Shown here: in pieces, positions 940 to 40,883 of the stretch | How positions within the stretch are numbered: the first letter of the stretch is position 1 | Layout: every line of letters starts with the position of its first letter | Assembly (NCBI RefSeq): GCF_964204865.1 | Contig: NC_135261.1 | Span: forward strand, 17,732,001 to 17,796,000 | Origin: Styela clava | Lineage: Eukaryota | Direction of reading: 5' to 3' | Length of the DNA stretch: 64,000 nt | Program-made: the position numbers and the translations under genes | Notes under the pieces: generated by a model | The model's input: the letters and a program-made list of their open reading frames with translations, nothing else | Database searches by the model: none | Told to the model about the DNA's origin: nothing

Positions 940-3900
940 CTAACAATCAAAAACTAAACCTAAGCCCTGACTAGGTATCATAACGTTAGACATTCCGCCG
1001 TTTCCGGCATAACATTTTCTTAGTGCAGTCATTTTGCTGATAAAAAGATCCCTGCTCGAATGCGTGTAAAGTCCATACTGTTGTCCATTAACATTTTCTG
1101 GGTAGTACATTCGATACGATCCTTCGTTTCTCTGGGTTATGTATACGTTTTGATTCATTTGCTTGATTTTTGGATTGATTCCAGATTGTTTGCAGGAACC
1201 TTTTGGCTCGATATCCACAAATGTTATATCTTTTATTGCATCAAGCAAATTTCCGCTGAAATTACAATCAGTAACTGGAATCACAAAATCTCAGTATGGT
1301 ATAATATGGTCGATAGTGGTCGTGCACTTCGGACTTCCATTTTTAAATAGCTAGTGAGCATTTATTAATATTTTTGCTTGTATTCAAAGATAAATAGATT
1401 TCGAAATAAAATAGGATTTGAAAACGTATGTTACCTGCATTTCACCTCTATGCAAGCAGCAGACATGTTTCTATCTCCCCAACTTATATCTTCTCGGAAT
1501 CCGTACAATTTTCCAACCATATTTAGTCTCTGCCCAACTAAACTTTTTGCCAAAATCCTGGTTCGGTCACCTCTTATGCCAATCTGCAGTTTTATTAAAT
1601 ATTTTAACGAAACCAGACAATGAATATATACTACTGTTCTTATAAATGCATACCACGGATTCATAGTCTTACATTAATCTTTAATTTACCGCTAAAAAGC
1701 TATCTGACGTCAATACGTTACATACATACATAGAATAAGTTTTCTCACAGTGAGCTGTTATTCGCTCGAAAGTTGTCTTTTATTTTAAGAAATGAATTCG
1801 TGAACCCAAAGGATTTCCATGGTACTTGAATGTTGAAATCCCTTTTATTACTATTTAAAATATACTTTATGATTCAATGCCGCACATTGATCAACAACTA
1901 TCTTACTCGATCATCTAAAGGTATTAAAGACTTTCAAAGTATAAGTTGTACTGAGTATAAATATGAAGAAATCAATCACCTTAATGTAGCAAGTTGTGAA
2001 ATCAAAAGGTTTCGACCACCAGTTGAAGGGTGTATTATACCAAGTACCGAGAAGATTAGTCTCTTCTACTGGAGCTGTGTTGAATTCTTTTACGTATCTT
2101 GACTGTCTGAAAACACAAATTCAATTAGAAGAAAGTATATCATTGCCAAATTAGTTTGAAAAATGATGCAACGAAGCATTGTTTTGAATAACAATATTAA
2201 CATTCGAAGTAAAAAGAAAATATTTATGTATTGTCCCCTACTTGAAGATAAAATCATAAATCTATATATATATATTAGTTACATATAAAAGCGGTGATGA
2301 TCTTCTCTGATAGATGCTAGTTGGCATTCCTCTTTCGTTTCGTATATAGGACCTCTCAAATTTTCCTTTGTTGAATCAACATCGAAATTAATAGAATTGT
2401 CTTCGGAATTGACATATACTCTAAAAGTTAGCACAGAAAAAAAGCGTGATTTATAAACAGCATGTCGGCACTACTGTAGTTATCGAGTGCCACCATCAAA
2501 CACAAATATAGTTTACCCTTTGTAAACATTTGTACAAAAAAATGTTACAAAAATCTAATCGGTGTAAAATTTACTCAATAGTTAAATTTCAAATGATTTG
2601 ATTACTGACAGCAAATAATAACTACTTATAAGATCGATGTCATACTTTAGGTGGTACAATAAAATAAATAGTATATTTGCAGAAAAAAATTGTTATTCTG
2701 TCAAGTATGAAATACGCAAAATGAGTTTAACAGAAACACATATCATACCCCTGAATGTTCTTCAGCTCCTCGGGATTTAACGTAGTGTTTCCGTTGATAT
2801 AAACTGAGAATAGGCAACAAAAATGTATGTTATATTGAGAAAAAAACAGCGTATAATAAGTTAAAATTAATTCAATGTGGCTTCTTTTATGAACAAAAAC
2901 ACAAATTAAACAAATTTGGAACGTTAGAAAAATCAACGTTTGCAGAAGGTTCCAATATTTATCACGTGCGCAATTTTTTCTTATAAAGTTGTAATTTTCG
3001 ATGAGTACTAAAAATTTATTTATTCACCTTTAAATTTTGCTGTAAATAGATCTTCATCGCACGGCAAAGGGAGACAAACTCCTTGAGATCGTGTCGTAAT
3101 ATCTTCTACAGATGTATACCAAGTATTATTTGCTTTGTAAATTCCCTTTGCAATCAAATCATCTATTTGTTCAGCAATTCTGAAGTCATTAGTTTTGTAT
3201 CCTCGAACTGAACGAAGAAATATATGTCTGTTGTTTATGAATTCCAATAATTAAACTTGAAAACTCCGTTGAACATGTTATCTTTACCTTTGACATAGCA
3301 TAACTTCCTTGCAGCTCGTGCTATTGCCAGATAATTATGAGATTCTGTGAAGTCATATTCACAGACGAGATCCTTTCCATTTCTGCTTTTCTTCTGATAA
3401 TTAAGATATTTAGCAAATAAGTGAATAAACCAATTCGAAAGCTATCAAACAGCAACTCCGATATATTTTTTAATTCTCTTAATTAAAATCGGTTTTTGTT
3501 TTGAAAAAACAGGATCAAATAAGCCTTTTGACTTGATATTTTATTAAGTAATTTTTTTGCCGACGGATTGTCAGCGTCATACCATGCTGCAATGTAGCTT
3601 CATCCCAAACCTCAAATCTTTGATGTTCTTAATTTTTTTTTTTCAAAAAATTTATTTTGTATTAATTATCATGATAGGGATAAAGTTACAACCTTCAGCT
3701 TTTCTCTCTGATCCCATTGTTGAAAAAAGGAGCTCCATTCCCATAAACTCAAATCTTCATCTCTATCTTTACGATTTGATATATGATTGACTGATGGATA
3801 TATCACCGCCTAAATTCGAGTATTCTTATTAGTAAATAATTCTATTAGAGACCTTTAAATGAGAGTGTGAAATTCCACAAATGAATGAGTTATCTCTATT

Positions 3901-6900
3901 GTTTTGAACTACAGTTCATGACAGAGGATTTTAAAACGTACTTTATAACACAGCTATTTTACACAATCGGTCTATCAATGGTAAAGATACTAACAATGAG
4001 TCTAGCTCTCCTAAAATTTAGTCAAATTCGAAAAGTGCGAGCATACTTTTATGTTTTATTGGACACGAAATGGGCATAAGTATCGTTTTCTTTTTATTAA
4101 TATTATATTGTTTTTGATCAAGTTGTTAGTAATATTCCTGTTGCGACCGTATTAAAAATCGCTTTTCCCATTAACTACTAAACCAATCACTTCCGAATTT
4201 TCAATGGTTAAACATTACATTTTTCGCTAGAAGACTGTTTTATTTATTTCAAAAATTTTTGTCGCCCCGATGAGATTTGTTTTTTATGTGAGATGACGTA
4301 TTCAAATAAAAAAACGGCGCTTATTGGGGCGGTTCCGGCTTCGCGTTAGCGATTTCGCGTTCGGGCGTAGTCGTGAACACTGCGGTATGGTAGCGGTAGG
4401 CTACTATGACAAACTGCATTCCCATAGTACTTCGTGTCCATATATTTGAGCATCGCCCTCTTGTTTGTTTATATATAAAGTAATAAACACTGCGGCAAGT
4501 GAGCAAATTGGTTTTACTTAAACATAATAGAATATTATCCTTGAAATAGCGGCTCACTGTAATTTTACCTTCAAATGCATCAACGCTTCATCTCTCTGTC
4601 CTCTGAACATGCAATACAAAATATCATAGAACAACATCAATTCTCCTCTGCGTGAATAAAACGTTCCTGGTGTTGTTTCAATTTCATATCCCCTCTCGTT
4701 GACATATTTTGCATTATAAGTGACCTATAGAGAAAAACAATTAGTTGAGTCTAAAGGTTACATTTATTTTTAGTTGTTTACAAATTGTTGCTTTGCAATA
4801 AGCAAGTACAAGTAATTGGAATCATTTTGTTTTTTCATATGGGATTTATTAATAATGTTCGCCTAAACCAGTGGTTCCCAACCTTTTTTTATATCGCGGC
4901 ACACTATTGAGCTCTTTAAATATTCGCAGCACACTCATCACAAAACATGAACATTTTCTACTCAAAAGGCCATTTTGCTATAAAATAATATAAAACAAAG
5001 AAGATCTATCTGATAAGCGAATTTCATTCATGTAAATACAACATACCCTGTATTTAGTAACAGTTATATATAGAATAATAATGGCGGATGTCAGTGGGAC
5101 TGTTGTGCCTGGTGCTTCTTTACTACTGCTGCAATTTGTGAACGAATGTGCGAAAGACATACTCTTAATTCTTCTTCCGTGTTTTTAAGTCGTTCTAGTT
5201 TTTATTCCTAATATTGTTTAGGTAAGAAAATCCAAGCTAAAAGATGTAAGAAGTTGAACTAGTAACCTGGGAATCAGAGTATCAGAGACATAGTTAATTT
5301 AATCCATAGAATGTAAATAAACAGTTGCAGAGGAGGTTCACGGCGCCACCCGAGGTGAAAAAGCGTTGCCTAAACCACTTGCCTAAACTGATAAATGTGT
5401 TTATAATATAAAAAAAAATATTATGGTATACTTCACAATATTTTCAATATATTTATTTTTATTTTTTTTATTTCTCTCACCTTACCCTCATATGGTTGAC
5501 CGGACAGTTTGTAGAACGACACGGGATTGACTGACATTGATGCTTTTTCTAAGTTTATTGTCCACTCGTTCATGGAATTATTTTCCGTTAGTTCTTCTGA
5601 TATCATTGGTATTTGAATATCTATGAATATGGATCCGCCATTCTTTTTAAATTTCAATATCTGTTAATATAGTTTTGATAAATATCTAACACATAGAATG
5701 AACGTTTTATTTCAACGGTGATACCGTAGGAGAAAATTAAGCGTTAGCAAACCTTTTTTCAAGGTTGTGAAACACTTTTGATAAACCAGTTTTCAAAGTC
5801 GGTTATTAGATAAAATTTACCTTTTTAATAAATTTACCTTCATTGTTGTTAAGAATAATTTTTGGTTGTCTTCAAATCTAAGTAAGAACTCTTGTAGTCC
5901 GGCTTCAAAATATATCGTAAATGTGCCATCTACATTTGTAGTTGTGAGAAATTCACCATCATGATATATTAAACCGTGTGAAAATGGGACATAGTTTCCT
6001 TTATCACTGATTCCGTAAGCTCTAAAACAAAATACAGCAATGCTTTCATTTTATTAATATATTTTAATGTGTTATTTTCATTCATATCCAGTTTTTCGTC
6101 AAATTGGAGTGCAAAATTGCAAACGTATGCTTGTTCTACGATTTTGCAGCATTATTCTTCCAAATATAAATCAAATTATTTCGAGAAAGTATATCACTAT
6201 ATACGGATTATAAAAAACTCATTTGTAAAAATGTAAATTGCAGTTCTTTCAACTAAACGTTTCTCTCATTCCACGTTTACCTTCCATGGAACGATGTTCT
6301 CGAATTAATGCACTGTTGACATTGACACCGGGCAACCTTCTGAACAGTTATCGTATAGTCGTTGTAGAATGCATCTGTAGTATAGAGGAATGAAGTATGA
6401 ATTTCTGTATAATCATTAGCAATCGTATTTTGTGCGCCGAATCTATGATTTCGTGGAAGTTCAGGTTTCAGGTATCTCGAGAGTTGCAGTCAGGTTCGAG
6501 CCTGAGTTACATTTACCTTTCATCATTAACCAGTCATCAAACTGTTCTGCTACTGCTACTACAATAAAAGCTATTGGCCAAGAAGTGGATCTACACATCG
6601 TTTTTTCCTGTAATTTTTATTGAGAAAAATCTTCTTCCAAAACTAGCAGGCTGATCGATTTCAAATGTTCAGTACTTGTATTGCTATTGGTTATCTGCCG
6701 ATATTTAGAGAAAACTGGTGCTCTCAGGCCTTACCGATGCTCTAACGAGAAACATGTACGCCGTACACTCGATCACTGGCGATTCATTTCCATCCAAGCA
6801 GTCCCATTATGTATTAAATTATATCGAAGTTTTGGCATATTCACCTTTACACTCAAGAATTTCATTATCTTCCAAAGCAATCCCACAGCAGGTATTTTGT

Positions 6901-7021
6901 CTTGAAGAACACTCTGTATACGAACATGTCCCGGCATTATATTGTACAGTGCGGTTGTATTTGTCGAAGCAATACGGAACTTCAATTAAATGAGGTCTTA
7001 ATTCACATTTTCCAGATTTTC
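940..7021 (-). CDS. CILP-like C-terminal region (Cys-rich segment, beta region, C2 'NTPPHase-homologous' part; exons 33-45)
   Basis: Colinear motif matches to vertebrate CILP as recalled: [14 protein letters not shown]~CCGISKTEEREIQC; VARCQCQQC~VAKECSCQRC; [13 protein letters not shown]~SFYRQNGEPYIGK; CYVKVRGY~CFVKVRAY; [14 protein letters not shown]~GPIYAFENLRAC..HFRFY; [14 protein letters not shown]~WWPKPMEFRACYIK; [20 protein letters not shown]~VGKLYGIRD..SAACLEFKCSG; PKGSC~PQGSC; GLGLVFDC~GVALTFNC. Confidence 0.85.
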
Positions 7022-10000
7022 CTTTAATATAATATAAAATAAGATATAGATTAGAATTTTGTTGGGGTTAGATATATTGTGGAAATTACTCAACGTCATA
7101 ATTTCCCTCTGACATATACAATACCTCCATATCATACTTTTAAGTGTCGACGATAGAGTCCAAAATGACAACTCCCATGCTTTCTTATTTGAAAATTTGA
7201 CATTGCAGTTGTTCGTTTAAACTAGTAACTTTTAAAACTTCGGATCTATATTCTAAAATGACCTGGGATTAGTAATTATAGTTCGATCTGCAAAGGCATA
7301 AAAACCTGGGGTTTTTGAATCTAGTGCTGATCAACAAAATTCAACTGAATCAGCTAAAAATTACCTTGACAATAATATGATCCGATTGGGTCTTGGACGC
7401 ACGTTTGGTCCTCATCACAAGGAATATCTGCACATCTTATACCTCCTGCTTCGCAAATACATTGGTTCTCACAGTTTTTCGTCCAAAAAAGTTCAAGATT
7501 CTGAAAAATAAAAAATAAATTGAAGTAATATCATTTTCAATTTTTTCTATATTATACCTAAAATGGTATAAAAAATTTTTTATACTTTATAAATCATCCC
7601 ATTTCTTTCGCATCCACAACCTTCAACTCGACATCCTGAAAAGTAAAATCAGTAAGAATGTTACCAGTAATATTTAATTAAACTAAAATTCAAAATAACT
7701 TTTATAATTTGCAGTTACAAATGAATGTACTTCTAATGTACTCAATTCTCTTGTTTGTGAGTAAAATATAATTTGATTTAGAGTATTTTGGAAATAGTTC
7801 ATCAGTGAAACGTTTGAAAAAGATTTATTCGACAATAACCGAACAGTTTTCACTTTTTTTCAATTTGGATAACATATTCGTTCAAATCTTTAAGCGTAAT
7901 GTTGCCTGAACAATAATTGAATCCATCTCCATTGAATCCTTCTCTGCAAAAACAAATGTAGCTCCCAGGAGTATTGACACAAATAGCATCTGCGTGACAA
8001 GGTTGTGATGCACATTCGTCGATATCTACAATATAATGAATGTACTTCTGTTAATATTTTTTTCATTTTTTCAAAATTGTTGTTTGATTCTTCTTGATAT
8101 TATTTCGCTTTTCCTTTCAACTACTGAGACAATTGCTTTGAAATTTTCAGTGGTTAAATATTGTTGTTGTGGTGGCCTATTTGGGTGTGTGACGTCATCA
8201 AAATTGAAATTTGCGCACCGTGTGGCGGTTCCACGATATCATTCCAGCGATCATTTGGTCAGCAAATTCGTTTTTTTATCGACGAGGAAGACTAGCGGTA
8301 CCGTGAAAGACTTGATACTACTGCGTTTTTGCAATCTTGTCTGCTTATTTAAGCAATGCTCTCATGTTCTAAATCTAAGACATTGATCAGTACTGTCAAA
8401 CTGCAAATTACTAAATCTAAACTATTTTTGTTTCTTCGTTTCTTCATAATCACAGATCACACTGAATTGCCAACTAAGAGTTTTAATCCAATTGAGTGTT
8501 CTGAATAAACAATTACCGTTACACACTGGATTCCTTTTTAACCATTTTCCATTATTCCTGCAAGTGTTGACAAAATCTCCCTCCAATTCATATCCATTTT
8601 TACAACTGAAAAATATGATTTCTCCTGCCTCAGCTGATGTGCCTTCCGCCCAAAATTCAACTTCTCCGTTTTCAATACTTAGTGGAATAGGACAAGGAAC
8701 AGAAACTACAAAATAGTAATTAATTTATTAATATTTTATTTAAGACATGGACAAAACACTTATATTGTAGTTGGGAAAACTGATTTAGTTTTCCAGGCCT
8801 TTTGGAATAGTAAAGTTATTATTTATAAGTCATGTCAGGTACTGATTATTTCATCCTACTGAAAATAAATTTCAAAAAATTAGAATGGGAACTGATTATG
8901 AGCGACAATATATATATAAGTGACATCAGGTCAGCAACAAGAAAACAAATTTGCAAGATGTGTGAAGTGTTAACTGGAAGTGAATTGCGTACATACATGA
9001 ACAATTTTCACGTCCATCTCCTTTGTATCCTAATTTGCAGACGCAATGAAAAGTTCCGGGACTGTTGATGCAATCTGCGTCAGGATGACAGTCATGAACA
9101 GTCCTCAAGCAGTCTCGAATCTTAGTGTAGTTTGTAGTGCCTTCCATATCGCATATTGTTGTACGACATTCGTCAATATCTGAAGATATTTTTGTATTAA
9201 TGGGTATAATACGTTTTTATCGCAATGACAGCTGTGGTCATGATTTGAATGTGTAATATTTTCACCCAAGTTATAACGTCTACAATAGCACAATAAAAAT
9301 CTGCATCAATAAGAAGACTTGGAATGAAGAATGGATAACTAAACTGTGCATGTCTCAAGACAAGATGTTATTAAATAGAATTATTTTTATAAATCAGGCG
9401 TGTGCAGCATTTTTGTCTGAGGGTCTTATAACCAACTTCAGACACCTAGCTTGGCCGCACAAAATATTCAGTTTTTTCATATACACAACGATTTGAAAAA
9501 TGCCCACAATAAGAAGGCAATAGTCTTACGGTAATAAAGGGCAAAACGGCCACACCAAATGGCTTGGCGGGCCGAATTGTGGCCCTCAAGCTGCCTGTTG
9601 CACACCCCTGCTATAAATCATCTTTCAATTATATCAAATATGCCCGAACTTCAGGGCCTGGTACAATGCTTAAAAAGTGATTTTGATTTGGTATACAGAA
9701 TAACCCTTGAGATAATTTTTCTTGAATTCCAAAATAATCAAAATGATTGTTATGGTTTAAAGATGGGTGTGGTTGAGTGGAATTCCATGAGAATATCTTT
9801 ATGAGATCAAACGCATACCACGTTCAGCAAGTGAGATCGCATACAATATTGCCACCTAAATATGCATACCCAAGCATGCCGGAGGCTCGAATGACCATTT
9901 TCCACTTTCTAAGCATTCTGATGTCATTACTCGCATGACTGGTGATCCATATCCAGAACTGCAAATGTATTCAATCGTGTCTCCAATCTTCCAATCGTCC

Positions 10001-16000: not shown

Positions 16001-19000
16001 ACTTCTGTCGTAGTACCCTACATGTCAATCAGAGCGCGTATAGGGCGTTATTATAGAACATATTATGAAAACGTAGAAACAGAAATCATGTAATTCAGGA
16101 TACCTTCAAAATCTTTCACGCAAGTTTCTTGTCCTAGAATGTTTCTCTTACACGTTTCACTCTCATTGCAAGTATGTAAATTACAAAATGTGACTCCATT
16201 AAGACACTCGCATCTTCTTGTACATTGCCAAGATAATTGTGCTTCTCTGTTCTAAATATAAAAGTCCAACGTTAAAACATCACTCGATTGTGAATATTTA
16301 ATTAAACTTTTAGCACTTATTTAATTCACCTTGTAATACTTTCCTTCAAATTTGCAGCCACAATCCGACAGCGGCACACATTCTAAATCTGATTGCACGT
16401 TATCTTTATCGCAAACGCAACCTGTTACAATTGGAAAATATGCAATATTTCACAATTAAGTATTAAAAAATTATTTTTTACTGACGTTTGAATCATCCTT
16501 GATTAGCAAATAACAATTTTTGGTGACACTGGAATAGGATGACAAATAAAAAGTATATAAATAACGACTGTAGGTGCAACTGCAGTTATGCTTCACTTTT
16601 TAAACATACAATGCTAATATATATGAAGATGTTGTTATTGTTGATTCAAACTTTTAAATATTAGGCTAGTTTACAAGTATCAGATGATATGTATATTTTG
16701 CAAGCTTGTTAACTAAAAATGATATATAATACTTAAAATCTGTAAAATATGAAAATTATTTGCCAGAAAAAAATTTAAAATAAAATTATTGGAAGAAACA
16801 GAGGTGTAGGTAAGTGAGATGTGAATGACGTTTAGTATAAACTAAACCAGATGCTGGCAGTGCAGTGACGGCCCAATATTTTAATCCATTATAATATCTT
16901 GTTACATTTACATCATTTGTGGTTTGTTCGAATAAATATACACAATATCATGTTATGAAAATGTTCCTGAGAGTGTCATTTCATATGTTTATCATATCGT
17001 CACGCTAATAACCGAATTGCGTGAGTCAATTTTGGCGATTTTGAGTTTTTTATAAAATAGGTATTTATGTAATGCTGCGCACCTGTCTGTTAACTCAGAT
17101 TTTATTTTAAGAATTCTGAAACCCATAAAAATGGAGATTTAGTATGACATGCACGTGACATCACAAAGGCAAAATAACCTCGGCGAAGTATTTTAGAGTT
17201 TTTGCATCTCAAATTCTAGCTTTGCGCGTATTAATTTGAATTTATACTACAGTATAGGAAGACGTGCACTTGTGATATTCACTGTCCGAGTCCAATTCAC
17301 CTGGGTTGGCTTTTATATTGGGTGCATTGCTGTTTTATTTCTTAGATTTGATCTTAGTCTTATTTCGGTGGGTGTGCAGAACGTGTTATATTGATGCAAT
17401 ATATATTTTTAAACATGAAAAATAATGTAATTGAAACTGATTAGCTATTTTGGGGATTAGACATTGTAGATACTGAGAATTACATTCGTTTTTGGAATGT
17501 TCAGTTTTAGGACTGGTGCGTATAGTACAGTTGTAAAATTGCGTATGTCCCCAAGTCATAGACACATTTTTGCCTAAGTCACAGTGCGCCATTATGACGT
17601 CACTTAACTGCGTCATACAAATTAACTTAAATCCGGATACGATCAAAAAAATGAACCATGGCAAATTATTGATATTTATAAAATGATATTTATATTTATG
17701 ATATTGAATAAAATGATATTTATGATATGAGATGAGATGATATTGAATAAAATGATATTTAGGATATGAGATATTGATATTTATATTCATCCGGAAGCAG
17801 AGAACAGTCGAATAAACGGCTTACTCAAATAGCGAACAGCTACTGCTTCTCGTCCGGTTACAAGTCCAAGTTGGGCAAGTGATTACTTCAGTAGTTATTA
17901 TTCGTTTCAGATGTATGTGATTGATGGTAGCCGTGTGGCCCATCCAGTTCATGTGAACCCCCCTAATACAGCAAGGAGTTCAGTAATCCTCGTGCCCATA
18001 ATTAACGACCACAAGATTTGAACCCGCACACAACAACCAGAGACGCGATTCGCCAACCGTAATTTTCGTAAGATTTTATTTTATGCGTATTATATCCATA
18101 TATACCACAGAACTATATGTTTTAATGCTTTTACACCCTGTGAAAGTTTGACAAAATTAGTATTGCTGCAAATGATGTGATTACGTTACAAACAACAAAG
18201 TACGTCAGGCACCCAATATCACCTTTAATCTACCTTCAACGCACGTTGTAGAAAAGCAATAATCAGCGGCATCGGGATCTAAGCAGGTGTTTGGGCAACG
18301 ACTAGTGCAATGCGAGTACGAAGAATGTGATTGACACTTCATTACTGCATGTGAATAACTTATTATTATTATTATTATTATTATTATAAATTATGTTGGT
18401 AATTTATGTATTAAAAATAAAATTAAACTCACTTTTATTGAGTGAGCTTCTCCACTCATTTATCTCAATTCCTCTTCTCTGGCAGTTTTCAACATACGCA
18501 GCTATTGAGGATTCCGAAGCATCATTTGATCCATTGTGATAACATACGTCATAAAGACAGTTCTGAACAATAGAATGATATGAATGTAATATGTATAATA
18601 ATCTTCTTACAGGGTATTCAATTAAAAGAAGATTAACACATTTCTCGGTTATCATAACACTGTTTAACGTATTATAAAACAGGCAATCTGTTATTCTATT
18701 TATACAATGAAAAATAAGTCAAACAAATCTACGAAAATAAGTTATTGGTAAACCTGATGAAAAGTTTCTGACTCAACAGAATAACAAGCAGCAATCGGAC
18801 CATCTGAATTTGTGATGACAGAACATTCATCTTCAAATTGCATCAAATTATTTGAATCCAAGCAAGATGATTCAATCATGACATCAACAGAGTTACAACT
18901 TGAAATCAAAATAATTGCATTCTTTAGAAAAAAACGGTATAAACAGTAATTTTGGAACATTTTCTGTAAAATTTCGTTGGAATTTTTTCAAAACTAGTCA

Positions 19001-22000
19001 TGAATCAGACTTTCGATGAAGTATGCCATGAATCATTACACATCTTGTTTTGAATACAGATAACAATCGAACTATGCAAAACTGTATTGTTAATTATTCA
19101 CTTATGTATTCTGTGAATACATTTATTAAATTGATAAAATCTGGTTCATTTGACAAGGTTGTTAAAAGATATCCATCAAATAGGTGTTAACTTTCTAGTT
19201 TTCATTCATAAAATGCTGAGACATTGTAAAAAGCCATATCACCTTTTTGCCGGGTTCGTGGTAGGAATGAGATAGTGATTTCCAAACGTGTTTGTTTCAG
19301 TTAAAACAACTAATCCACCCTGAACTGCAAAATCATCTTCAGGACTATGGTTGTAATTGCCACACAATCCTTCAAAACGGAATAAACGGTTTTTACTATA
19401 CAACCTTATCAGACACAACTAGGCGCATTTTTCATTTCAAAACACTACTCGTAAAAAATTATATTATTAGTTCACTTGCTAATAATTTTGCTCATTCTTG
19501 GATCGAACCGCTGTGTTTTTGAGAGAATGCCCAATCTTCTCGTATAACCGAATGTGAGATTAGGTTTTCAGGTTTAAGTCACCTGTATTTATTTAAAAAA
19601 AAATGTAAATCGACGGACGGTACCATCACGTGGCGCAGTGTAAACATCGTCGGTATTTAAAGTAGCCTAATAGATACTGAATGTAAACGTAAACATATAC
19701 AAACATGCTTGTGCAAAATACTCTATTATCTATGTATACATAAGACGAAAAAACGTAAGAGAAAAAAAAAAGTATTGTGAGATATATTTTCAGTTCATAT
19801 ACCAATCGCAAATATAATCAATACTATGATAGTAGAACATCTCAACATAACTCATTGGACACGTAGTGGACATAGAGATCGTTTCAATATTATGTTGTTG
19901 TTGTTCTTGTTTTTTGACACGTTTTTAAAAAGTCGCTTTTCTCTTTGATTACTGGTCCAATTGCTTTGAAATTTTCAGTAATTGAGAATGAAATTTTTTT
20001 CTAGAAGACTATTACTTTTATTGATTTCTAAATTTTGTATGAATTCCATGAAATTCGATATTCTGTGTAATATTTTCATCCATGGGAAGGAACATGGATT
20101 TTAGTCCGCGTGATGACTGGCTGTACGTTTTGATTCTGCAAAATTCCTGCTACTGGAAATTTGGATTTTTCTATCGGTACCGGTAGCGTCAAAGGTACCG
20201 GTAAGGACTGATTCGCCCTCGTCTACGTGTCTATATATTTGAGTGTTGCTCTCTTGTTTTAAATGCAGCGGCACGTAATTGAGTGGTAACGGAGGTAAAT
20301 GTGGCTTGTGTGTTTATATGGAAATTGTACAAACAACAAGAACGATTATCACATGTATTCTACACAAATGGTATATACATATGATTATGTATATGCAATT
20401 ATTATAATCATGACAATAAATTCAAAGTTAAATTGGAGGCACATATCACTATCTATGTCACATGCTATCGAATTATAACAGAATAGATGCCTCAAGAATT
20501 TGCATACATTATCGAATAGTTTTCTTGCATTTTTTGAAACCTTGCTATCATGATCAAGGTTAACTTTATCAATCTCGCTGTTGAAGGTAGGAAGGACAGA
20601 GTGTTAATTAAAAAGATAAAATCAAAAAAGCAGACACACGATTATTTGATAACGGATGCTTCTAAAACTTGTATGGTTCTCAATTTTTAACAATTAAAGT
20701 ACGTAGTGTTCATCAAAATATTTTGATACTTGGGTTATAGGATAACAAAATATCACTTGTGCCTGCAGGTATTATAATATTATTTTTACATCAATTTATT
20801 CGGTGTGAAATTTCAATTAATCTACCACATCATTGTAGTAAAACAGATAATATCGCTATTCATACAGGCTTGTAATTTGATGTGGCATTCCAACTTTCGG
20901 TGGGTTTGTTTAATAAATTTATCTCTTTGTCTCAGATACTGTTTATAATTTCGCCATTTTTATATATGATAAGATGTTTGAATAAAAATATATACCAAAT
21001 AGACCTTTTGTGTCACCTGATGTATTGTTACTCCAATATCAACAGTTTAGGCTTCATAATTAGGTTTAAAGTATATGTAAAAGAATCTATCTCGTACCTT
21101 CTGTGTTACCGGAGTATTTGTCTGGTAGACCTAATGAAACATATCCCTGTCCATCATATGTAACGGTCATATCGAAATTTGTTGAAAGTTCTATAAATCT
21201 TCCGCTTGTTCGAATCACAAATTTGTTCTCGACTTCGAAGGGAAGACGTACTACAACTTTGTCCACCTACAATTTTTTTTTGTTTAACAAAAAGTAATGT
21301 AAAAAGACTTGATAGTACATATCAAAAGTGTATATATATATATATGTAATAAGATAGATTATCTTTATACTCTGACAGGCGGAGTCACAATACTTTTGCA
21401 AGTCGGCATTCATGTTATAAGATCAGCCACATTCATATATTTCCTTTTACAATATATTGTATTCAAATTATGTACTAAAATTGCACACCAGAAGTTTGTT
21501 TAACTTCGGTCTTTTCAGAGTTTTCAAAAAATGCACATATAAAATGGGTAGATTCAGGAACTTTATTTAATAGAAACGATTTTCTTTGTTGAAATATTTT
21601 TAAATTGTAAAGTGAAAACCTTGATTTCCAATACTCATTGTAAGTAGTGATAGCGTCAAACGTTTTTAATAATGGATGATTCAATGTTTTTCTTGTTTTT
21701 ACCAAGATTCTTTTTCCATATTGCATTTCAACTTGTTGTCCGAAAATATCAATTGTAACTTTTCGAATCCATGTTTCGCTTTTCAAAATTCTTGAATTTT
21801 CAATCTGAAAATTTTAATGTTAGTTTCAATATTGTGCAATGAAGAATATAGGAGAAAGACAAGTTTCTAACAACAAACATATGAAAGTGCAAGTGGTTTA
21901 CTTACTGATACATAAAATGACTCAATTGAAACATTGCGTGTAGATTTTGCCATGGTGTAGCTACAAGTTCCTCCAAACTTGTAGTTTCTTCCATCAAATG

Positions 22001-24926
22001 TTGTATAGTGAGGAAATCCAGTAGTAAAGCAGTATTTGATATTATTAGTATCTGAAACATACAAAATAAAATGCATGCTATATTTAGCTTACAATATAGA
22101 CACGACAGCGTTCGTTAGTTTGAGTAACTATTGAATTGATCGGCATGTTAATTTTCCATACTTCTCTTAAAAATGTCGAATGATTTCGATGCAATGTCCA
22201 CTTGTGTATTGTATTATGATTTTTTTTCGTATAGGATAATTTTCTGACATTCATGGAATCTACATACGTGTATATACGAAAAGTTTGCTTGAAAACGATT
22301 ACTTATGCATTTCGAAAAAATATTCACATAAAACTATAATGTTTAATAAAAAGTTGCACCCTTTTCAACACAAGTTGGAACATTGCTGGACCATTCTGAG
22401 GAAGAGAGGCAAATAAAATCGGATGATTCCTCAAGTTCATATCCTGAATTACAAGCAAATTGTATTCTATCTCCTTCGGAGAATGTTTGAGTCTCAGTAG
22501 AAGTCATATAACCATTTGTCGGTGGTAACGGTCGTTCGCATTCTGTAAAACATACAATAATGAGTATATATTATCAATTTGAATTTTTCCTCCGAGGGGA
22601 ATAATAGGTAACATCGCAAATTGACTTATGTTAGTTATCTAAGACATATACATATCGAGTTATTGAATAAAGTGTTCTGGCTTACAGTTATGTACAATAT
22701 ACAAAGGACTTTTCAAATGCACTCACTTGAATCACAACAATATCTAATTTTGTAATCATTGCAAACTCTATCATCTTGTTGTTGATTGATACAAGTTGCC
22801 CCATAATTTTTCTCAATTTTGATCACATCTTCTCCCAAAGTATAAGGATCCCCGTTTAAAAGTCGAACCTGCGAGGAGTATATAATCACTCAAACAACTT
22901 GCGCTCTTCCGTACGCAAGATTGTAAGAAAACTACAAAATAAAGCCTATAGCCACGATTGTAAGCTATGGCGCATTCAGGAACCTAAATCTTTTGCAATC
23001 ATATTTTCTTTCAAACACTTACGTTGGTTATTTTATTATTCTCCTAGATTTCAAATTTCGAAGAGATTTTTTTAAATCATTCTTGTACTAAATGGGCATC
23101 ACAAAATTGCATCGTTCCAAATACTTAAACTGTGTTTAGATGTTGACACATGTGTATAAATTGAAGCAACATATTTAATAAACAACAACCTGGTCCGACA
23201 AATATAGGCATCACACTGTTGTTGAAAATATAATATCATCGTAATACGTTTACCAAAGGCCGTGTTAAGAAATTCATTCTTATTTATTTGCGATAATCTT
23301 TCGGTGTTTCGCTACGGAACAATAGGATGAAAGCGTAAATTAAAAATGTAAATACCTCCATGCCGGACGGTTTGTCACATTCAACGACCCCTTCGGCTCT
23401 GTGATTGCTGAATAACTCAAAATCTCCTGCCCCTTTCGGATCATCGTCATTCGCCCACGAACCCCAAGCCCCGGTTTTGCAACTTCCAAATTGTGAGGTG
23501 CCTAGAATATCATGCATAAAGTCGAATAATATTTTATTTTTCTATTTACTATTTACGTGTATTACAACTATATCCAAAAGTTTCAAAATCGTATACGTGT
23601 CATTTAAGTTTGAATACGTGATGTCATTTGATTAGTTTGTCGGATACAATGAAGAGCTAGCTCACGTGACCATGTATACAATTTCACTGAACTGACATAG
23701 TATCAAAAAATGAATTGATGACTTCAATGTTTCTTGACATAACTTAATATTACCTGGGAGGGCACAGCGATATTTAACGAAGATGTAAGAATTTCCATTC
23801 AAACATGGATTGCCGAAAACATCTTCGCTAGCTAACAAAGTACAGCGTCGCTTTCCGTGGCAAACTTTCCATATAGTGTTGAAAGATGAGTACGACATAC
23901 ATTCTTGGAATGTTTGAAATTTTAAAATAATATCAGGTTTTGGCTGCAGACACCTGGAAACAGTAATTAACATAAATTAAATTACTTCATAGTTCAAAAT
24001 AAACACATGTGATTGACTGTATTACAAACGAATTATATATAATATATAAATGAACGATCGGAAAAATGCTAATTATCACCACGAAAAAACATAATTATAG
24101 TATTTAAGTTCATTGTTGCTATCTATGTTATAAAGTGGTATTTACGACACTTATATTATAAACGACAATGAGATGTTGTTTGTACTTATTGTAACGGAGT
24201 ATAAATCAAATTGTATAAAAGTTATATAATATATTTGTTACATACACATTTCTTTCCATTCTTCCATAATAAGCATGGTCAATAGAAAGTAAATGAAAAT
24301 CTTGGTTGCATTCTAATGTTGCTTTTTGATTGTTGCAAATGTATTCAACTTTAACTTCATTTTCTAGAAAATATATCAAAAATAGGTATCGTGAATGTAA
24401 TTTACTCATAAGATGTACCTTTATTACAATTCCATACCGTCATAAAAATTGTCATAGCAACCACATAAAACAACCATAAAAAATAAAACGAAAATCAGCA
24501 CCTTTTCGTTGTTTTAATGCAGTAGCATAGAGTGTTTATAGTGGGTTTAAAATGAATAAATAAATGCCTAATGTTCGACCATATTATTATAAACAAAAAC
24601 CAGTATAACTTTATATATAAAATTTTAATTTTTAATAATTGGTGATTGAAAATACTCCACAACATAATTCGATCGAAAACATAAGATAATCATCAGATCC
24701 AGGTTTACGTTACCAAGCATGTTGGCAACGCTTCTTCCAAGACAATTCGCCCGCAGCTAGTGTTTTCTAGGTATACTGTATATGATCTGGAGATGAGTGG
24801 TTTGAAATACCACATTCGTCATGTTCCATATTTATTGTTTTACCAACCTGTAGTTTCTGGGTTATTCCTTTGAGAGGATGTGAGAGCAAATAATAATGTC
24901 CAAAGAAAATAAACAACGTAATTCAT
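940..24926 (-). CDS. Secreted CILP-related mosaic protein (SUEL-WxxW-Sushi-VWD/C8/TIL x2-EGF/Sushi-CILP C-terminus), ~45 exons, ~2222 aa
   Basis: Hand-assembled exons: 24926-24848, 24363-24246, 23953-23754, 23501-23356, 22868-22727, 22542-22360, 22051-21906, 21804-21703, 21266-21098, 19369-19243, 18898-18754, 18562-18433, 18344-18234, 16421-16330, 16251-16104, 15732-15470, 15115-14963, 14687-14518, 14062-13918, 13635-13472, 13391-13273, 12888-12778, 12351-12232, 11812-11627, 11219-11043, 10714-10538, 10058-9870, 9179-8997, 8705-8517, 8025-7906, 7635-7586, 7500-7365, 7021-6845, 6374-6281, 6021-5838, 5660-5481, 4724-4569, 3809-3693, 3393-3288, 3207-3028, 2803-2749, 2420-2283, 2106-1980, 1583-1435, 1255-940. 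All introns are GT-AG except one GC-AG, phases are compatible, and the total of 6669 nt is divisible by 3. Confidence 0.85.
4869..5380. mobile_element. hAT-type non-autonomous element in an intron
   Basis: Left end CAGTGGTTCCCAACC, degenerate right end ..AAACCACTT, 8-bp TSD GCCTAAAC on both sides. Confidence 0.7.
7365..12351 (-). CDS. EGF-Ca and Sushi/CCP array (EGF, 4x Sushi, EGF, Sushi, EGF) plus TILa-like module (exons 23-32)
   Basis: EGF exons start DVNEC or DIDEC and contain CxNxxGSYxCxCxxG. Sushi exons follow CxxP...NG...G...YxCxxGY/F...C...GxW...PxC. Each EGF and Sushi exon is a symmetrical phase 1-1 exon. Confidence 0.9.
9395..9610. mobile_element. hAT-type MITE
   Basis: TIRs CAGGCGTGTGCAGCA / TGTTGCACACCCCTG; TSD (T/C)TATAAAT. 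A related end lies at 48182-48240. Confidence 0.8.
10292..10404. mobile_element. 113-bp hairpin MITE with GG...CC ends and 8-bp TSD (Merlin-like termini)
   Basis: CTCTAGAAGTATGCGCACCAAGATG ... CATCTTGGTGCGCATACTTCTGGAG; flanked by CTAAATTT on both sides. Confidence 0.8.
11332..11587. mobile_element. Degenerate MITE-like inverted-repeat element
   Basis: CACTTGTGCCACACTTGTCCCAA versus TTGGGAATAGTATGGCCAAGTG, with internal CCTAAC repeats; no clear TSD. Confidence 0.45.
12778..15732 (-). CDS. Second VWD-C8-TIL assembly (exons 16-22)
   Basis: [14 protein letters not shown]...[40 protein letters not shown]...[46 protein letters not shown]. Confidence 0.9.
14160..14470 (+). mobile_element. tRNA-derived SINE-like element
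   Basis: A-box-like TGGCGCATCGTGG and B-box-like GTTTGAATC. The body (GGATTGCTGGACTC..GGGGTTCAC..GTAACCGGACGAGA..GTTCGC..TAAGCCGT) is shared with the inverted copy at 17790-18065. Confidence 0.7.
16104..22051 (-). CDS. First VWD-C8-TIL-TILa assembly (exons 7-15)
   Basis: [44 protein letters not shown]...YVENCQRRG...[20 protein letters not shown]...[18 protein letters not shown]; typical of zonadhesin/FCGBP/tectorin. Confidence 0.9.
17670..17790. repeat. AT-rich degenerate minisatellite (ATGATATT-based) at the SINE tail
   Basis: Repeated AAATGATATTTA / TGATATTGAATAA units. Confidence 0.6.
17790..18065 (-). mobile_element. Diverged second copy of the SINE-like element
   Basis: The minus strand has a B-box GGTTCAAATC followed by GGATTACTGAACTC..GGGGTTCAC..GTAACCGGACGAGA..GTTCGC..TAAGCCGT. 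Confidence 0.65.
18360..18388. repeat. (TTA)n microsatellite
   Basis: About 9 TTA units. Confidence 0.85.
22727..23501 (-). CDS. WxxW (Mucin2_WxxW / CILP N-terminal) domain, 2 exons
   Basis: [19 protein letters not shown]...[10 protein letters not shown]...[23 protein letters not shown] follows the WxxW...P...GDxE...CxDYxxRxCC consensus. Confidence 0.85.
23754..24363 (-). CDS. SUEL-type (rhamnose/galactose-binding) lectin domain, 2 exons
   Basis: [28 protein letters not shown]...VC...[35 protein letters not shown] matches the SUEL pattern A-x-YGR ... C-x-GK-x-x-C ... FG-[DN]-PC ... Y-x-C. Confidence 0.85.
24848..24926 (-). CDS. Exon 1, signal peptide of the mosaic gene
   Basis: Translates [26 protein letters not shown]: a hydrophobic core then small residues, followed by a phase-1 donor G|GTTGGT compatible with the next exon. 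Confidence 0.75.
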
Positions 24927-34972: not shown

Positions 34973-36401
34973 ATGAAGTTGTTTCCACGGGTAGAAATTG
35001 CGGAAAGCAATGATGATTCTGATTCAGAAAAATCAGCCAATTCAATTTCGTCTGCCGAAGATATTCAACAAACACCATGTGTTTCGGGAAAATATTTCCC
35101 TCTCAGCCTCCCGAACATTGCTGCTTCTATGGAAAGATTAAAGAATATGTTAAATTTTGTGCAACAACGTTCTAATACGACACCGATGTTCCCTCTACCT
35201 GTTCCCACCCTTGGATCAACCCAAATTTCAACAGTTTGCGATGCTTTGGCGGAAAATGGAGACATCGAAAGGCTTGCTCGATTTTTGTGGTCCCTGCCCG
35301 CGACACCTTCAATTATGGAAGCTTTGCAAACAGACGAATCAATTTTAAGAGCAAGAGCACTTGTAGCATTTCATCAAGGTAACTTTAGAGAAGTCTATGG
35401 TATTTTGGAACAACATAGATTCACTGATGCTGCATGGCACCATCGATTGCAAGCGATGTGGTTAGAAGCTCATTATCAAGATGCCGAAAGATCACGAGGC
35501 CGTTCACTTGGTCCAGTTGACAAATACAGAATAAGAAAAAAGTTTCCATTACCGAGAAGTATTTGGAATGGAGAACAAAAAAGTCATTGTTTCAAAGAGA
35601 GAACAAGAAATTGTCTTCGAGAATCTTATCTCCGAGATCCATATCCAAATCCGAGCAAAAAGCGTGAACTTGCAAGATTAACTGGTCTTTCGCCTACTCA
35701 AGTTGGAAATTGGTTCAAAAACAGAAGACAGAGGGATCGTGCTGCTGCTGCGAAAAATAGGTAAGCTTGTTTAAATAAACATAAAAGATCTTTGAAACGT
35801 ATCAATTCCATATTATCATTCTATTTCAATTTTGATATTTTTTTCTTTATGGCGCAAAAGCTTGACTATAAATACCTTTATTCCATTTGCACATTTCTAT
35901 ATTCGTATTTGCTCTATGGCTCATACATATTTTTACCTTTTTTTTAGAGTTATGCACCACGAACAAAATGGCGGAGATCACATGTCGTCGACATTAAATA
36001 TTCAGCAAGGTACAACGCGACAAAATTCGATCGAAGAACAACTGAATCACTACAGAGAGCTATCAAGTCCAGGCGATCTCGATACTTCTAAAAATGTATT
36101 AGGATTTTCAACGCCATCTCCAACTCTTAATGATCAAAATACGTCAACAGAACTGATGATGTCATCGATGTTTCGTCAAAAAACTAATGATTCCTCACCG
36201 CAAAAAAATTCGGAGAATTCAGAGCGTTCAGCATTTGCTGAATTCAGTAAATCTTCGAGTTTTATGTTAAATCACCATGCGTTTCTACCCTTTGGAGACA
36301 CTTTGGGTAGCCGCAACAATCCCAACTTCAGAAATACTTTCGGATCCCCGGAAAAAACCATCGACAACACCGACGCACAAAATTTGAATATTCACAAATA
36401 A
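34973..36401 (+). CDS. Six3/6: Six3/6 homeobox transcription factor, paralog A (exons 34973-35760, 35948-36401; ~413 aa)
   Basis: Six domain [14 protein letters not shown]...[20 protein letters not shown], homeodomain [11 protein letters not shown]...[10 protein letters not shown] and the Six3/6-diagnostic tail AAAAKNR. Phase-2 GT-AG intron directly after KNR; AATAAA at 36526. Confidence 0.95.
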
Positions 36402-38278: not shown

Positions 38279-38426
38279 TTGTCATCCCACTCGAAGTAAA
38301 TGAAATAAATAGCATTAACACCGTTGATGCGTGATTAAGGTATTAGGGATTTAAATTTATTTCCGCTGTGAAGATTCAACACATGTCGTGCTCAGGTGAT
38401 GTACTTAACCCATGAAATAATTACCG
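38279..38426. promoter_or_regulatory. Distal conserved non-coding block upstream of Six3/6 B
   Basis: Paralogous to 30847-30984. Confidence 0.7.
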
Positions 38427-40102: not shown

Positions 40103-40205
40103 CATTCACAAAAACATATGTTGGATCAAATGTCTTCGCAGTTGAATTTACAAAAATGCTTTTATCAGTTGCAAGTGATACGCGTGTCGAAGTCGAAAGT
40201 GTAAA
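40103..40205. promoter_or_regulatory. Middle conserved non-coding block upstream of Six3/6 B
   Basis: Paralogous to 34076-34190. Confidence 0.65.
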
Positions 40206-40636: not shown

Positions 40637-40662
40637 GAGAAAAAATAGGGATTAGACGTCAC
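40637..40662 (+). promoter_or_regulatory. Proximal motif of Six3/6 B: GGATTA plus CRE-like GACGTCA
   Basis: GAGAAAAAATAGGGATTAGACGTCAC, about 247 nt before the ATG. Confidence 0.6.
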
Positions 40663-40883
40663 GAAAATTCGACTATATTAAGCGAAATCTCTGAGATGAT
40701 TGAGCAATTCTTCGACATTAGTATCCTGAGTAGTTTTATTTGTAGAATGCTTGGCAGCCATTTTATGAACTGTTAGTCACTTGGGGTTTTTGCACATATA
40801 TTGAATCTCTTTTATGTTAAATCTCTTTTATGTATTGTATTAAAAAATTTTATAGTATATAGTGAAAATATTGGCTATAAAAC

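What the first reader, a model, noticed from the sequence alone, without database searches (positions are those of the whole stretch)
940..24926. Giant CILP-lectin-mucin/FCGBP-complement mosaic: CILP ends enclosing a VWD/Sushi/EGF core
Seen: 45 phase-compatible exons join into one ~2222-aa ORF, signal-SUEL-WxxW-Sushi-[VWD-C8-TIL]x2-EGF-Sushi x4-EGF-Sushi-EGF-TILa-CILP C-terminus, with no TM segment noticed. Established: vertebrate CILP1/2 are WxxW-TSP1-Ig followed by this C-terminal region, while VWD-C8-TIL arrays belong to FCGBP, zonadhesin, tectorin and gel mucins. Inference: this is a CILP-family gene whose TSP1/Ig middle is replaced by about 1300 aa of mucin-like and complement-like modules, with a sugar-binding lectin added in front. 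It could be a secreted matrix, mucus or recognition scaffold. I do not know a described protein with this architecture, and an automated annotation would probably label it zonadhesin/FCGBP-like and miss the CILP end.
Basis: partly seen in the sequence, partly recalled or inferred. Interest (0 to 1): 0.85.

Follow-up and report, generated by a model that had tools for sequence, protein, structure and literature searches.

The report
Sea-squirt CILP–mucin-type mosaic matrix gene
This is a real, single 44-45-exon gene of the sea squirt Styela clava, named only "zonadhesin-like" by automated annotation, which encodes a secreted 2,185-2,222-residue protein with a sugar-binding lectin head, a mucin/complement-type core and the full tail of the cartilage protein CILP; this domain mix turned up in no other protein searched and has not been studied.

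Summary
Observation confirmed. The window is Styela clava, contig C16:17,732,001-17,796,000. The minus-strand gene 24926->940 is LOC120329335.

- **Gene model.** RefSeq XP_039251867.2, "zonadhesin-like isoform X1", 2185 aa, is encoded exactly by 44 exons.
- **Domain order.** Signal, SUEL lectin, WxxW, Sushi, two VWD-C8-TIL units, an EGF/Sushi array, TILa, then CILP_5th/CILP/CILP_8th/CILP_C.
- **The tail is CILP.** Its last 659 aa align end to end with lamprey-to-teleost CILP1/2 (E about 1e-67 to 1e-70). It shares 12 consecutive intron phases with Styela's canonical CILP gene.
- **What it lacks.** No TSP1, Ig, furin site, GDPH, FCGBP_N, PTS region or TM segment.
- **Relatives.** No other protein listed in a 5.8-billion-sequence search combines VWD with CILP domains. 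Styela has two partial look-alikes: SUEL-WxxW-CUB-Sushi-CILP on C4, and SUEL-WxxW-Sushi-VWD...EGF without CILP at C16:13.26 Mb. The Ciona counterpart shows no CILP tail.

No paper describes the gene. The scan also holds an unverified note of a VWD-on-CILP chimera on another contig (s1-829496); I could not locate it. Verdict: new variant of a known kind, moderate interest.

The parts
24848..24926 (-). Exon 1: start codon (24926-24924) and hydrophobic signal peptide
   Evidence: Exact match to P0001 residues 1-26. It is the most hydrophobic 19-mer of the protein. Sequence read.
23754..24363 (-). SUEL (rhamnose/galactoside-binding) lectin domain, two exons (24363-24246, 23953-23754)
   Evidence: Pfam SUEL_Lectin 3e-9 on the second exon and 1.6e-12 on P0001 residues 43-129. 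PDB relatives are rhamnose-binding lectins 5h4s and 2zx0.
22727..23501 (-). Mucin2_WxxW (CysD-type) domain, two exons (23501-23356, 22868-22727), with the single WGSW motif
   Evidence: The two halves hit profile positions 1-41 and 48-88. The whole domain scores 1.7e-15. Best non-tunicate matches are the N-terminal WxxW domains of vertebrate CILP (E 3e-12 to 8e-9), about equal to MUC5AC CysD.
22360..22542 (-). Sushi 1, one phase 1-1 exon
   Evidence: Pfam Sushi 5e-10; phases.
16104..22051 (-). First VWD-C8-TIL-TILa unit (8 RefSeq exons plus the skipped exon listed next)
   Evidence: VWD 1.6e-9, C8 3.7e-10, TIL and TILa hits. The VWD starts GFPHY, not GDPH. Junction 21098->19369 is in the RefSeq model.
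18234..18344 (-). In-frame 111-nt exon (phase 1-1, 6 Cys) absent from RefSeq isoform X1; encodes the N-terminal half of the first TIL domain
   Evidence: Pfam TIL 5e-4. Acceptor ...catgcag| and donor |gtagat; with this exon the TIL domain is complete and parallels unit 2. tblastn gives 45% identity to the second TIL of P0001. My own model picked it.
12778..15732 (-). Second VWD-C8-TIL unit plus a short EGF-like exon (7 exons)
   Evidence: VWD 5e-11 and 1e-5, C8 7e-11, TIL hits. The VWD starts GSPHY. Best solved relative is FCGBP 8rde, 9.8e-282 for the whole protein.
7906..12351 (-). EGF/Sushi array: cbEGF (12351-12232), Sushi x4 (11812-9870), EGF (9179-8997), Sushi (8705-8517), cbEGF (8025-7906). 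All are single phase 1-1 exons; the last has a GC donor.
   Evidence: Pfam EGF_CA/EGF_3 and Sushi hits, E 2e-8 to 1.6e-14. Phases and the GC-AG intron. Three DxD/NEC calcium-binding motifs.
7365..7635 (-). TILa/VWC-like cysteine module, two exons (7635-7586, 7500-7365), immediately upstream of the CILP part
   Evidence: Pfam TILa 3.5e-6. A 343-nt intron links it to the next exon.
6845..7021 (-). CILP_5th-type exon, phase 1-1; first exon of the CILP tail; has no ATG or signal peptide of its own
   Evidence: Pfam CILP_5th 3.2e-4, below the gathering score. It is colinear with the start of the vertebrate CILP alignment. The equivalent exon has the same phase in the canonical Styela CILP and in the C4 paralog.
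3693..6374 (-). CILP domain (PF23591) and the following unnamed CILP middle domains, 5 exons (6374-6281, 6021-5838, 5660-5481, 4724-4569, 3809-3693)
   Evidence: Pfam CILP 6.4e-6 on the exon and 5.7e-11 on P0001 residues 1611-1695. Intron phases 2,0,0,0,0 are identical to the canonical CILP gene. Isoform X2 ends at 5484 through an alternative donor.
2283..3393 (-). CILP_8th domain, 4 exons (3393-3288, 3207-3028, 2803-2749, 2420-2283)
   Evidence: Pfam CILP_8th on exons (2e-3 and 7e-5) and 8.3e-12 on P0001 residues 1861-1988.
940..2106 (-). CILP_C domain, 3 exons (2106-1980, 1583-1435, 1255-940 including the stop codon)
   Evidence: Pfam CILP_C 4e-7, 9e-9 and 5.8e-17 on exons and 6e-42 on P0001 residues 1995-2185. 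The last exon is fused relative to the canonical gene.

Best explanation
One protein-coding gene of Styela clava (LOC120329335) encodes a secreted, cysteine-rich, N-glycosylated extracellular scaffold of 2185 aa, or 2222 aa with the extra TIL exon.

Shown:
- It is a true member of the CILP gene family by its tail. That tail comprises 13 exons and about 660 aa, is colinear with vertebrate CILP1/2, and has the same intron phases as the canonical Styela CILP gene.
- The canonical TSP1-Ig middle is absent. In its place are a Sushi, two VWD-C8-TIL assemblies, an EGF/Sushi rod and a TILa module.
- A SUEL lectin precedes the N-terminal WxxW domain.
- Nearly all module exons are symmetric phase 1-1, so modules can be inserted or removed without breaking the frame.

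Inferred mechanism:
- The SUEL domain binds galactoside or rhamnoside glycans on matrix, mucus or microbes.
- The VWD-C8-TIL units drive disulfide-linked self-association, as in FCGBP, VWF and mucins, but without GDPH self-cleavage.
- The calcium-binding EGF/Sushi array forms a semi-rigid spacer and protein-binding surface.
- The CILP tail supplies the still poorly understood matrix-interaction function of CILP. Unlike mammalian CILP-1 it is not released by furin.

The likely role is a polymeric lectin/matrix or mucus component. The tissue is unknown.
For: Single gene:
- The RefSeq protein matches 44 exons in the window exactly, with canonical splice sites.
- RefSeq isoforms X1 and X2 both span the core-to-CILP junction 7365->7021.
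- That intron is only 343 nt. The CILP_5th exon has no ATG and starts in phase 1, as do its equivalents in the two other Styela CILP genes.
- The window has no gaps, and the gene is single copy in the genome.

CILP identity:
- Pfam CILP_C 143.7 bits, CILP_8th 45.9 bits and CILP 42.7 bits.
- The 659-aa tail aligns end to end with CILP1/2 at E 1e-67 to 1e-71.
- Twelve consecutive intron phases are identical to the canonical gene. Chance is about 5e-6 by my estimate (per-intron match about 0.36).

Secreted scaffold:
- Signal peptide, no TM segment, 138 Cys, 17 N-glycosylation sequons and 3 calcium-binding EGF motifs.
- Closest solved relatives are FCGBP, VWF and mucins for the VWD units, CR1/CR2/factor H for the Sushi array, and rhamnose-binding lectins for the SUEL domain.
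Against: - The single-gene reading therefore rests on gene structure and on a predicted (XP_) RefSeq model.
- RefSeq isoform X2 stops before CILP_8th and CILP_C, so part of the output may lack most of the tail.
- CILP_5th scores below Pfam's gathering cut-off.
- All functional statements are inferred from domain families. No expression or binding data exist.
- The SUEL domain has NPC where rhamnose-binding lectins typically have DPC (sequence; the motif is from my own knowledge), so sugar binding is not assured.
Confidence: 0.85

Rival explanations
1. These are two adjacent genes: a SUEL-WxxW-VWD-Sushi-EGF gene and a separate CILP-like gene. The reader and Gnomon merged them into one model.
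For: Styela has a paralog with the head and core but no CILP tail (C16:13.26 Mb). The Ciona counterpart models also lack a CILP tail. Ciona's old 6372-aa model was later split, so models of this locus type are unstable. I obtained no RNA evidence.
Against: The junction intron is 343 nt. The first CILP exon has no ATG or signal peptide and starts in phase 1, which matches the preceding exon. The equivalent exon is internal and phase 1 in both other Styela CILP genes. Both RefSeq isoforms cross the junction. A CILP tail without a signal peptide could not be secreted.
Confidence: 0.07
2. It is one gene, but the CILP tail is a recently captured, functionally dispensable 3' appendage. The main product would be a tail-less isoform like X2, making the gene effectively an FCGBP/zonadhesin-like lectin.
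For: Isoform X2 (1739 aa) ends after the CILP domain and lacks CILP_8th and CILP_C. The tail is much more diverged from canonical CILP (about 26-28% identity) than the Styela canonical CILP is from vertebrate CILP (45-48%).
Against: All 13 tail exons are open, have canonical splice sites, and still score far above the Pfam cut-offs (CILP_C 143.7 bits). The C4 paralog keeps the same tail with a different middle, which argues that the tail is maintained.
Confidence: 0.08

Closest known systems
Vertebrate CILP1/CILP2 and the canonical Styela clava 'cartilage intermediate layer protein 1-like' (XP_039261724, C13:8.88 Mb)
   Same: It has an N-terminal WxxW domain. The C-terminal ~660 aa are colinear from CILP_5th to CILP_C. 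Intron phases are identical over 12 introns with the canonical Styela gene.
   Different: It has no TSP1 or Ig domain and no RX[KR]R furin motif. It adds a SUEL lectin and about 1300 aa of Sushi/VWD-C8-TIL/EGF modules. The tail is only about 26-28% identical, against 45-48% between canonical Styela and vertebrate CILP. The last intron of the canonical gene is absent.
FCGBP / zonadhesin (the source of the RefSeq name 'zonadhesin-like')
   Same: It has repeated VWD-C8-TIL(-TILa) units. The best full-length database and PDB matches are FCGBP (27-31% identity over about a third of the protein; 8rde at 9.8e-282).
   Different: It has only two units. It lacks FCGBP_N, which defines FCGBP according to PMC4948705. 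It has no MAM domain or TM segment as in zonadhesin, and no GDPH autocleavage motif. None of the 120 listed relatives carries a CILP domain.
Ciona intestinalis 'IgGFc-binding protein-like' XP_078495955.1 (1458 aa) and the older 6372-aa model UPI00052148B7
   Same: The Ciona proteins are colinear with it through SUEL, WxxW, Sushi, two VWD-C8-TIL units, EGF and Sushi. Identity is 33-36% over 940-1330 aa.
   Different: The Ciona protein has a CUB domain before the Sushi. In the old model it has a much longer EGF/Sushi array. No CILP tail is detectable, although the old model ends inside an EGF and may be incomplete.
Styela clava paralogs: C4:13.12 Mb (SUEL-WxxW-CUB-Sushi-CILP tail) and C16:13.26 Mb (SUEL-WxxW-Sushi-Sushi-[VWD-C8-TIL]x2-EGF, no CILP)
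   Same: The C4 gene shares the lectin-WxxW head, the CILP tail, the intron phases and the fused last exon. The C16:13.26 Mb gene shares the head, the split WxxW exon and the VWD core.
   Different: Each paralog has only half of the combination. Only the window gene has both the VWD core and the CILP tail.

Membership tests
CILP family (cartilage intermediate layer protein) | CILP_C domain (PF23599) above the gathering score | tested here: met
   143.7 bits against a cut-off of 27, on P0001 residues 1995-2185. Exon-level hits.
CILP family (cartilage intermediate layer protein) | CILP_8th (PF23730) and CILP (PF23591) domains above the gathering score, in canonical order | tested here: met
   45.9 and 42.7 bits against a cut-off of 27. 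The order is CILP, CILP_8th, CILP_C.
CILP family (cartilage intermediate layer protein) | CILP_5th domain (PF23708) | tested here: inconclusive
   The exon 7021-6845 scores 21.2 bits, below the 27-bit cut-off. The region is nevertheless included in the end-to-end alignment to CILP1/2 and has the same phase 1-1 exon as the canonical gene.
CILP family (cartilage intermediate layer protein) | End-to-end colinearity of the C-terminal half with CILP1/2, and shared gene structure | tested here: met
   Residues 1527-2185 align over their full length to lamprey, shark, coelacanth and teleost CILP1/2 at E 1e-67 to 1e-70. Twelve intron phases are identical with Styela canonical CILP.
CILP family (cartilage intermediate layer protein) | N-terminal Mucin2_WxxW domain | tested here: met
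   57.9 bits at residues 145-226. Most vertebrate CILPs listed carry PF13330.
CILP family (cartilage intermediate layer protein) | TSP1 repeat and Ig (I-set/C2) domain between WxxW and the CILP tail | tested here: not met
   P0001 has no PF00090, PF07679 or PF13927 hit, whereas the canonical Styela and vertebrate CILPs have them.
CILP family (cartilage intermediate layer protein) | Internal furin-type cleavage site that splits the precursor (described for mammalian CILP-1; from my own knowledge) | tested here: not met
   No RX[KR]R motif occurs anywhere in P0001.
FCGBP | FCGBP_N domain (PF17517) plus many VWD-C8-TIL units with GDPH autocleavage motifs (definition in PMC4948705; the GDPH feature is from my own knowledge) | tested here: not met
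   Only two VWD-C8-TIL units, no PF17517 and no GDPH; the VWD domains start GFPHY and GSPHY.
Zonadhesin | MAM domains, mucin-like region, VWD array and a C-terminal TM segment (from my own knowledge) | tested here: not met
   No PF00629 hit. No TM segment and no PTS-rich stretch; the maximum S/T/P fraction is 0.35 in 60 aa.
Gel-forming mucins | Three N-terminal VWD-C8-TIL units, PTS domains and a C-terminal cystine knot (PMC4948705) | tested here: not met
   Two units, no PTS region, and a C-terminus that is CILP_C.

The most novel reading that the evidence does not exclude
The CILP tail may be a portable matrix-interaction cassette that ascidians have coupled, through phase-1 introns, to at least three different middles: TSP1-Ig, CUB-Sushi, and Sushi-VWD/EGF/Sushi. 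The window gene would then be a disulfide-polymerising, lectin-headed 'polymeric CILP' with no counterpart in vertebrates. It could be used in the tunic, the filter-feeding mucus net or pathogen trapping. Because its tail sits in a different context, it would give a handle on the still unknown biochemical role of the CILP C-terminal half.
Probability: 0.3. Interest if true: 0.55.

Novelty: new variant of a known kind. Interest (0 to 1): 0.4.

Why it matters
CILP is a disease-linked cartilage and heart matrix protein, and the role of its C-terminal half is poorly understood (my own knowledge). This gene shows that half is a modular unit. Its gene structure is conserved between the two Styela genes compared, the canonical CILP and this mosaic. 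In the closest invertebrate relatives of vertebrates it is combined with mucin/VWF-type polymerising units, complement-type repeats and a lectin.

Together with the two half-matching Styela paralogs and the Ciona counterpart, the gene is a clear, testable case of exon shuffling in a chordate matrix gene family. It also shows how an automated name ('zonadhesin-like') hides family membership.

The significance is evolutionary and annotational rather than a new principle.

Tried and rejected
- **RNA evidence.** No junction evidence was obtained.
- **Long proteins with a similar CILP tail.** A search with P0001 region 1520-2185, over candidates of 1200-3800 aa, found only the protein itself.
- **Whole-length search.** None of the 120 listed relatives has a CILP domain.
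- **Canonical CILP tail search.** It was saturated by vertebrate CILP1/2, so it could not reveal other non-canonical architectures.
- **Last-exon phmmer against 1.8 billion representatives.** Only 9 hits. The unnamed Logan and ENA fragments could not be followed up.
- **Structure prediction of the CILP tail.** Not done. The tail exists only as part of a 2185-aa protein, above the 1200-aa limit, and a joined sub-sequence has no reference.
- **Joined models.** They were used only inside scripts to count exons and phases. Searches used single exons by reference or the public protein P0001.
- **Three weak CILP_C loci on C19.** They match only one exon and show no VWD or Sushi nearby, so I rejected them as further mosaics.
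- **The other scan note.** I looked for the VWD-on-CILP chimera noted elsewhere in the scan (s1-829496). By Pfam co-location, no second locus has both VWD and CILP_C.
- **Phylogeny of the tail.** Not attempted. Without a referenced C4 protein and without an outgroup it would not resolve the order of events.
- **Literature.** Searches found nothing on this gene or architecture.
Full report
**What is in the sequence.** The window is AT-rich (about 33% GC) and has no N. On the minus strand between 24926 and 940 there is a long series of short open segments. Scanned one by one by reference against Pfam, they give the following hits in order:
- SUEL_Lectin.
- The two halves of one Mucin2_WxxW domain.
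- Sushi.
- VWD, C8, TIL and TILa, then a second VWD, C8 and TIL.
- EGF_CA, four Sushi, EGF, Sushi, EGF_CA and TILa.
- CILP_5th, CILP, CILP_8th and CILP_C.

A crude splice-site and codon-usage dynamic programme of my own joined them into a 46-exon ORF.

**Identity of the gene.** A phmmer search of 1.8 billion representative proteins with the last exon returned a 2185-aa protein, P0001, that ends exactly with this exon.
- P0001 is XP_039251867.2, 'zonadhesin-like isoform X1' of the ascidian Styela clava. In its earlier version it was 'uncharacterized protein LOC120329335'.
- An exact spliced alignment places all 2185 residues and the stop codon on the window as 44 exons, from 24926 to 940. There are 42 GT-AG introns and one GC-AG intron.
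- The window is therefore this species' own assembly, at G000:C16:17,732,001-17,796,000, and the gene is single copy.
That exon is 111 nt, phase 1-1, has a good acceptor and a usable donor, and contains six cysteines.
- With the extra exon the first TIL domain is complete and parallels the second unit. Without it, as in RefSeq X1, only the C-terminal half of that TIL domain is present. Whether the exon is constitutive or a cassette needs RNA data.

Searches used single exons by reference or the public protein P0001.

The structural arguments are nevertheless strong.
- The intron between the TILa exon and the first CILP exon is 343 nt.
- The first CILP exon (7021-6845) has no ATG or signal peptide and begins in phase 1, which matches the preceding exon.
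- Both RefSeq isoforms cross this junction. X2 (1739 aa) diverges only after residue 1737, through an alternative donor at the end of exon 5660-5481.
- The equivalent CILP_5th exon is an internal phase 1-1 exon in both other CILP-type genes of the same genome.

**Is the tail really CILP?** Yes.
- On P0001, CILP_C scores 143.7 bits, CILP_8th 45.9 and CILP 42.7, against cut-offs of 27. CILP_5th is sub-threshold at 21.2 bits.
- Residues 1527-2185 align over their whole length with the C-terminal ~720 residues of lamprey, shark, coelacanth and teleost CILP1/2 (E 1e-67 to 1e-70, about 26% identity). They align equally with the canonical Styela CILP (E 1.5e-71).
- The exon structure gives independent support. 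From the CILP_5th exon onward, the intron phases of the window gene are 1,1,2,0,0,0,0,1,1,2,2,0,2. Those of the canonical Styela gene XP_039261724.2 on C13, mapped exactly, are identical, and its exon lengths are similar.
- Matching 12 shared intron phases by chance has a probability of about 5e-6 by my estimate (per-intron match about 0.36).
- The canonical gene has one further intron inside CILP_C, near profile position 165. The window gene lacks it.

**What it is not.**
- P0001 has no TSP1 or Ig domain, so it lacks the canonical CILP middle. It also has no RX[KR]R furin motif.
- It is not FCGBP. It has no FCGBP_N domain, which defines that family (PMC4948705), only two VWD-C8-TIL units, and no GDPH; its VWD domains start GFPHY and GSPHY.
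- It is not zonadhesin. It has no MAM domain and no TM segment.
- It is not a gel-forming mucin. It has no PTS region and no cystine knot.
- It does have a signal peptide, 138 cysteines, 17 N-glycosylation sequons, one WxxW motif and three calcium-binding EGF signatures.
- Its closest solved relatives are FCGBP (8rde), VWF and mucins for the VWD units, complement receptors and factor H for the Sushi array, and rhamnose-binding lectins for the SUEL domain. None of the 60 listed hits covers the CILP tail.

**Relatives and origin.**
- In a search of 5.8 billion sequences with the whole protein (candidates of 1200-3800 aa), the best hits are vertebrate FCGBP and zonadhesin, at 27-31% identity over about a third of the query. 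None of the 120 listed proteins carries a CILP domain.
- A search restricted to the tail found only the protein itself.
- The nearest tunicate protein is Ciona intestinalis XP_078495955.1. Its order is SUEL-WxxW-CUB-Sushi-[VWD-C8-TIL]x2-EGF-Sushi, colinear with the Styela gene.
- An older 6372-aa Ciona model continues into a long EGF/Sushi array. It has no CILP-like part, but it ends inside an EGF and may be incomplete.
- Within Styela, CILP_C occurs at C13 (the canonical gene), in the window gene, at C4:13.12 Mb, and as single-exon traces at three C19 sites.
- The C4 gene reads SUEL-WxxW-CUB-Sushi-CILP_5th-CILP-CILP_8th-CILP_C. In a crude model it shows the same tail phases and the same fused last exon as the window gene.
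- A further gene at C16:13.26 Mb reads SUEL-WxxW-Sushi-Sushi-[VWD-C8-TIL]x2-EGF... and shows no CILP part.
- VWD occurs at 20 or more loci, but only the window gene has both VWD and CILP_C.
- The window gene therefore combines the head and core of one paralog type with the tail of another. Almost every module exon is phase 1-1, the classical signature of exon shuffling.
- The data do not say whether an ancestral full mosaic lost parts in the paralogs and in Ciona, or whether a tail was joined to a core in the Styela lineage.

**Likely function (inferred).** The product is probably a secreted, disulfide-linked, multimerising lectin scaffold of matrix or mucus.
- The SUEL domain would bind glycans.
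- The VWD-C8-TIL units would drive self-association.
- The EGF/Sushi rod would act as a spacer and binding surface.
- The CILP tail would interact with matrix.

The tail is far more diverged (about 26-28% identity to canonical CILP) than canonical Styela CILP is from vertebrate CILP (45-48%). That points to altered or relaxed function. Isoform X2 lacks most of the tail.

**Novelty.** The gene is in RefSeq only as a predicted protein with a misleading name. No paper mentions it, the locus, or a VWD-CILP architecture. It is a new architectural variant of the CILP family, and equally of the VWD-C8-TIL proteins, not a new kind of system. The scan's own index also lists an unchecked note on another contig of this genome describing a VWD assembly on a CILP scaffold (s1-829496). 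I could not locate such a second locus.

Noticed in passing
window 18234-18344 (-): An in-frame 111-nt exon encoding the N-terminal half of the first TIL domain is missing from RefSeq isoform X1, which leaves a half-domain. It is probably a missed or cassette exon.
   Followed up: partly
window 5481-5660 (-) and downstream: RefSeq isoform X2 (1739 aa) uses an alternative donor about 3 nt before the end of this exon and ends two residues later (...YEG+HL). It thereby lacks CILP_8th and CILP_C. I did not locate the alternative terminal exon.
   Followed up: partly
window 7904-7905 (-), donor of exon 8025-7906: This is the only non-GT donor of the gene, a GC-AG intron.
   Followed up: no
L002:4918 -> L001:4292 (-), = G000:C4:13,120,292-13,130,918: A paralog with SUEL-WxxW-CUB-Sushi followed by a complete CILP tail (about 1100 aa in a crude model). 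Its tail has the same intron phases and the same fused last exon as the window gene.
   Followed up: partly
L021:5504 -> L022:6283 (+), = G000:C16:13,260,504-13,271,283, with further EGF exons up to about 13,286,300: A second paralog on the same chromosome, SUEL-WxxW-Sushi-Sushi-[VWD-C8-TIL]x2-EGF..., colinear with P0001 residues 36-1016 and with Ciona P0065. No CILP part was detected.
   Followed up: partly
G000:C19:7,046,055-7,047,315 (+); C19:4,166,647-4,166,757 (-); C19:4,335,706-4,335,816 (+): Three loci match only the first ~40 positions of CILP_C; one also matches the end of CILP_8th. No VWD, Sushi or other CILP exons were detectable within 30-40 kb. They may be highly diverged CILP-like genes; compare scan note s1-823022.
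   Followed up: partly
proteins P0065, P0256, P0257 (Ciona intestinalis): An older 6372-aa Ciona model has been split in the current annotation into 'IgGFc-binding protein-like' (1458 aa), 'P-selectin-like' (463 aa) and presumably more. The true extent of the Ciona gene is unsettled.
   Followed up: partly
protein P0006 (6679 aa, ENA, unnamed): A giant protein of unknown origin has five separate stretches weakly similar (E 1.7e-6) to the last CILP_C exon.
   Followed up: no
window about 34973-42414: Earlier scan notes on this window (s1-823049, s1-822959) report a tandem pair of Six3/6 homeobox genes with a gene-conversion tract. I did not examine them.
   Followed up: no
G000:C18:9,644,292-9,663,226 (-) and G000:C3:18,630,257-18,636,378 (-): These are tandem arrays of near-identically scoring Mucin2_WxxW exons. 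Together with at least 20 VWD loci, they indicate a large expansion of mucin-type modules in this genome.
   Followed up: no
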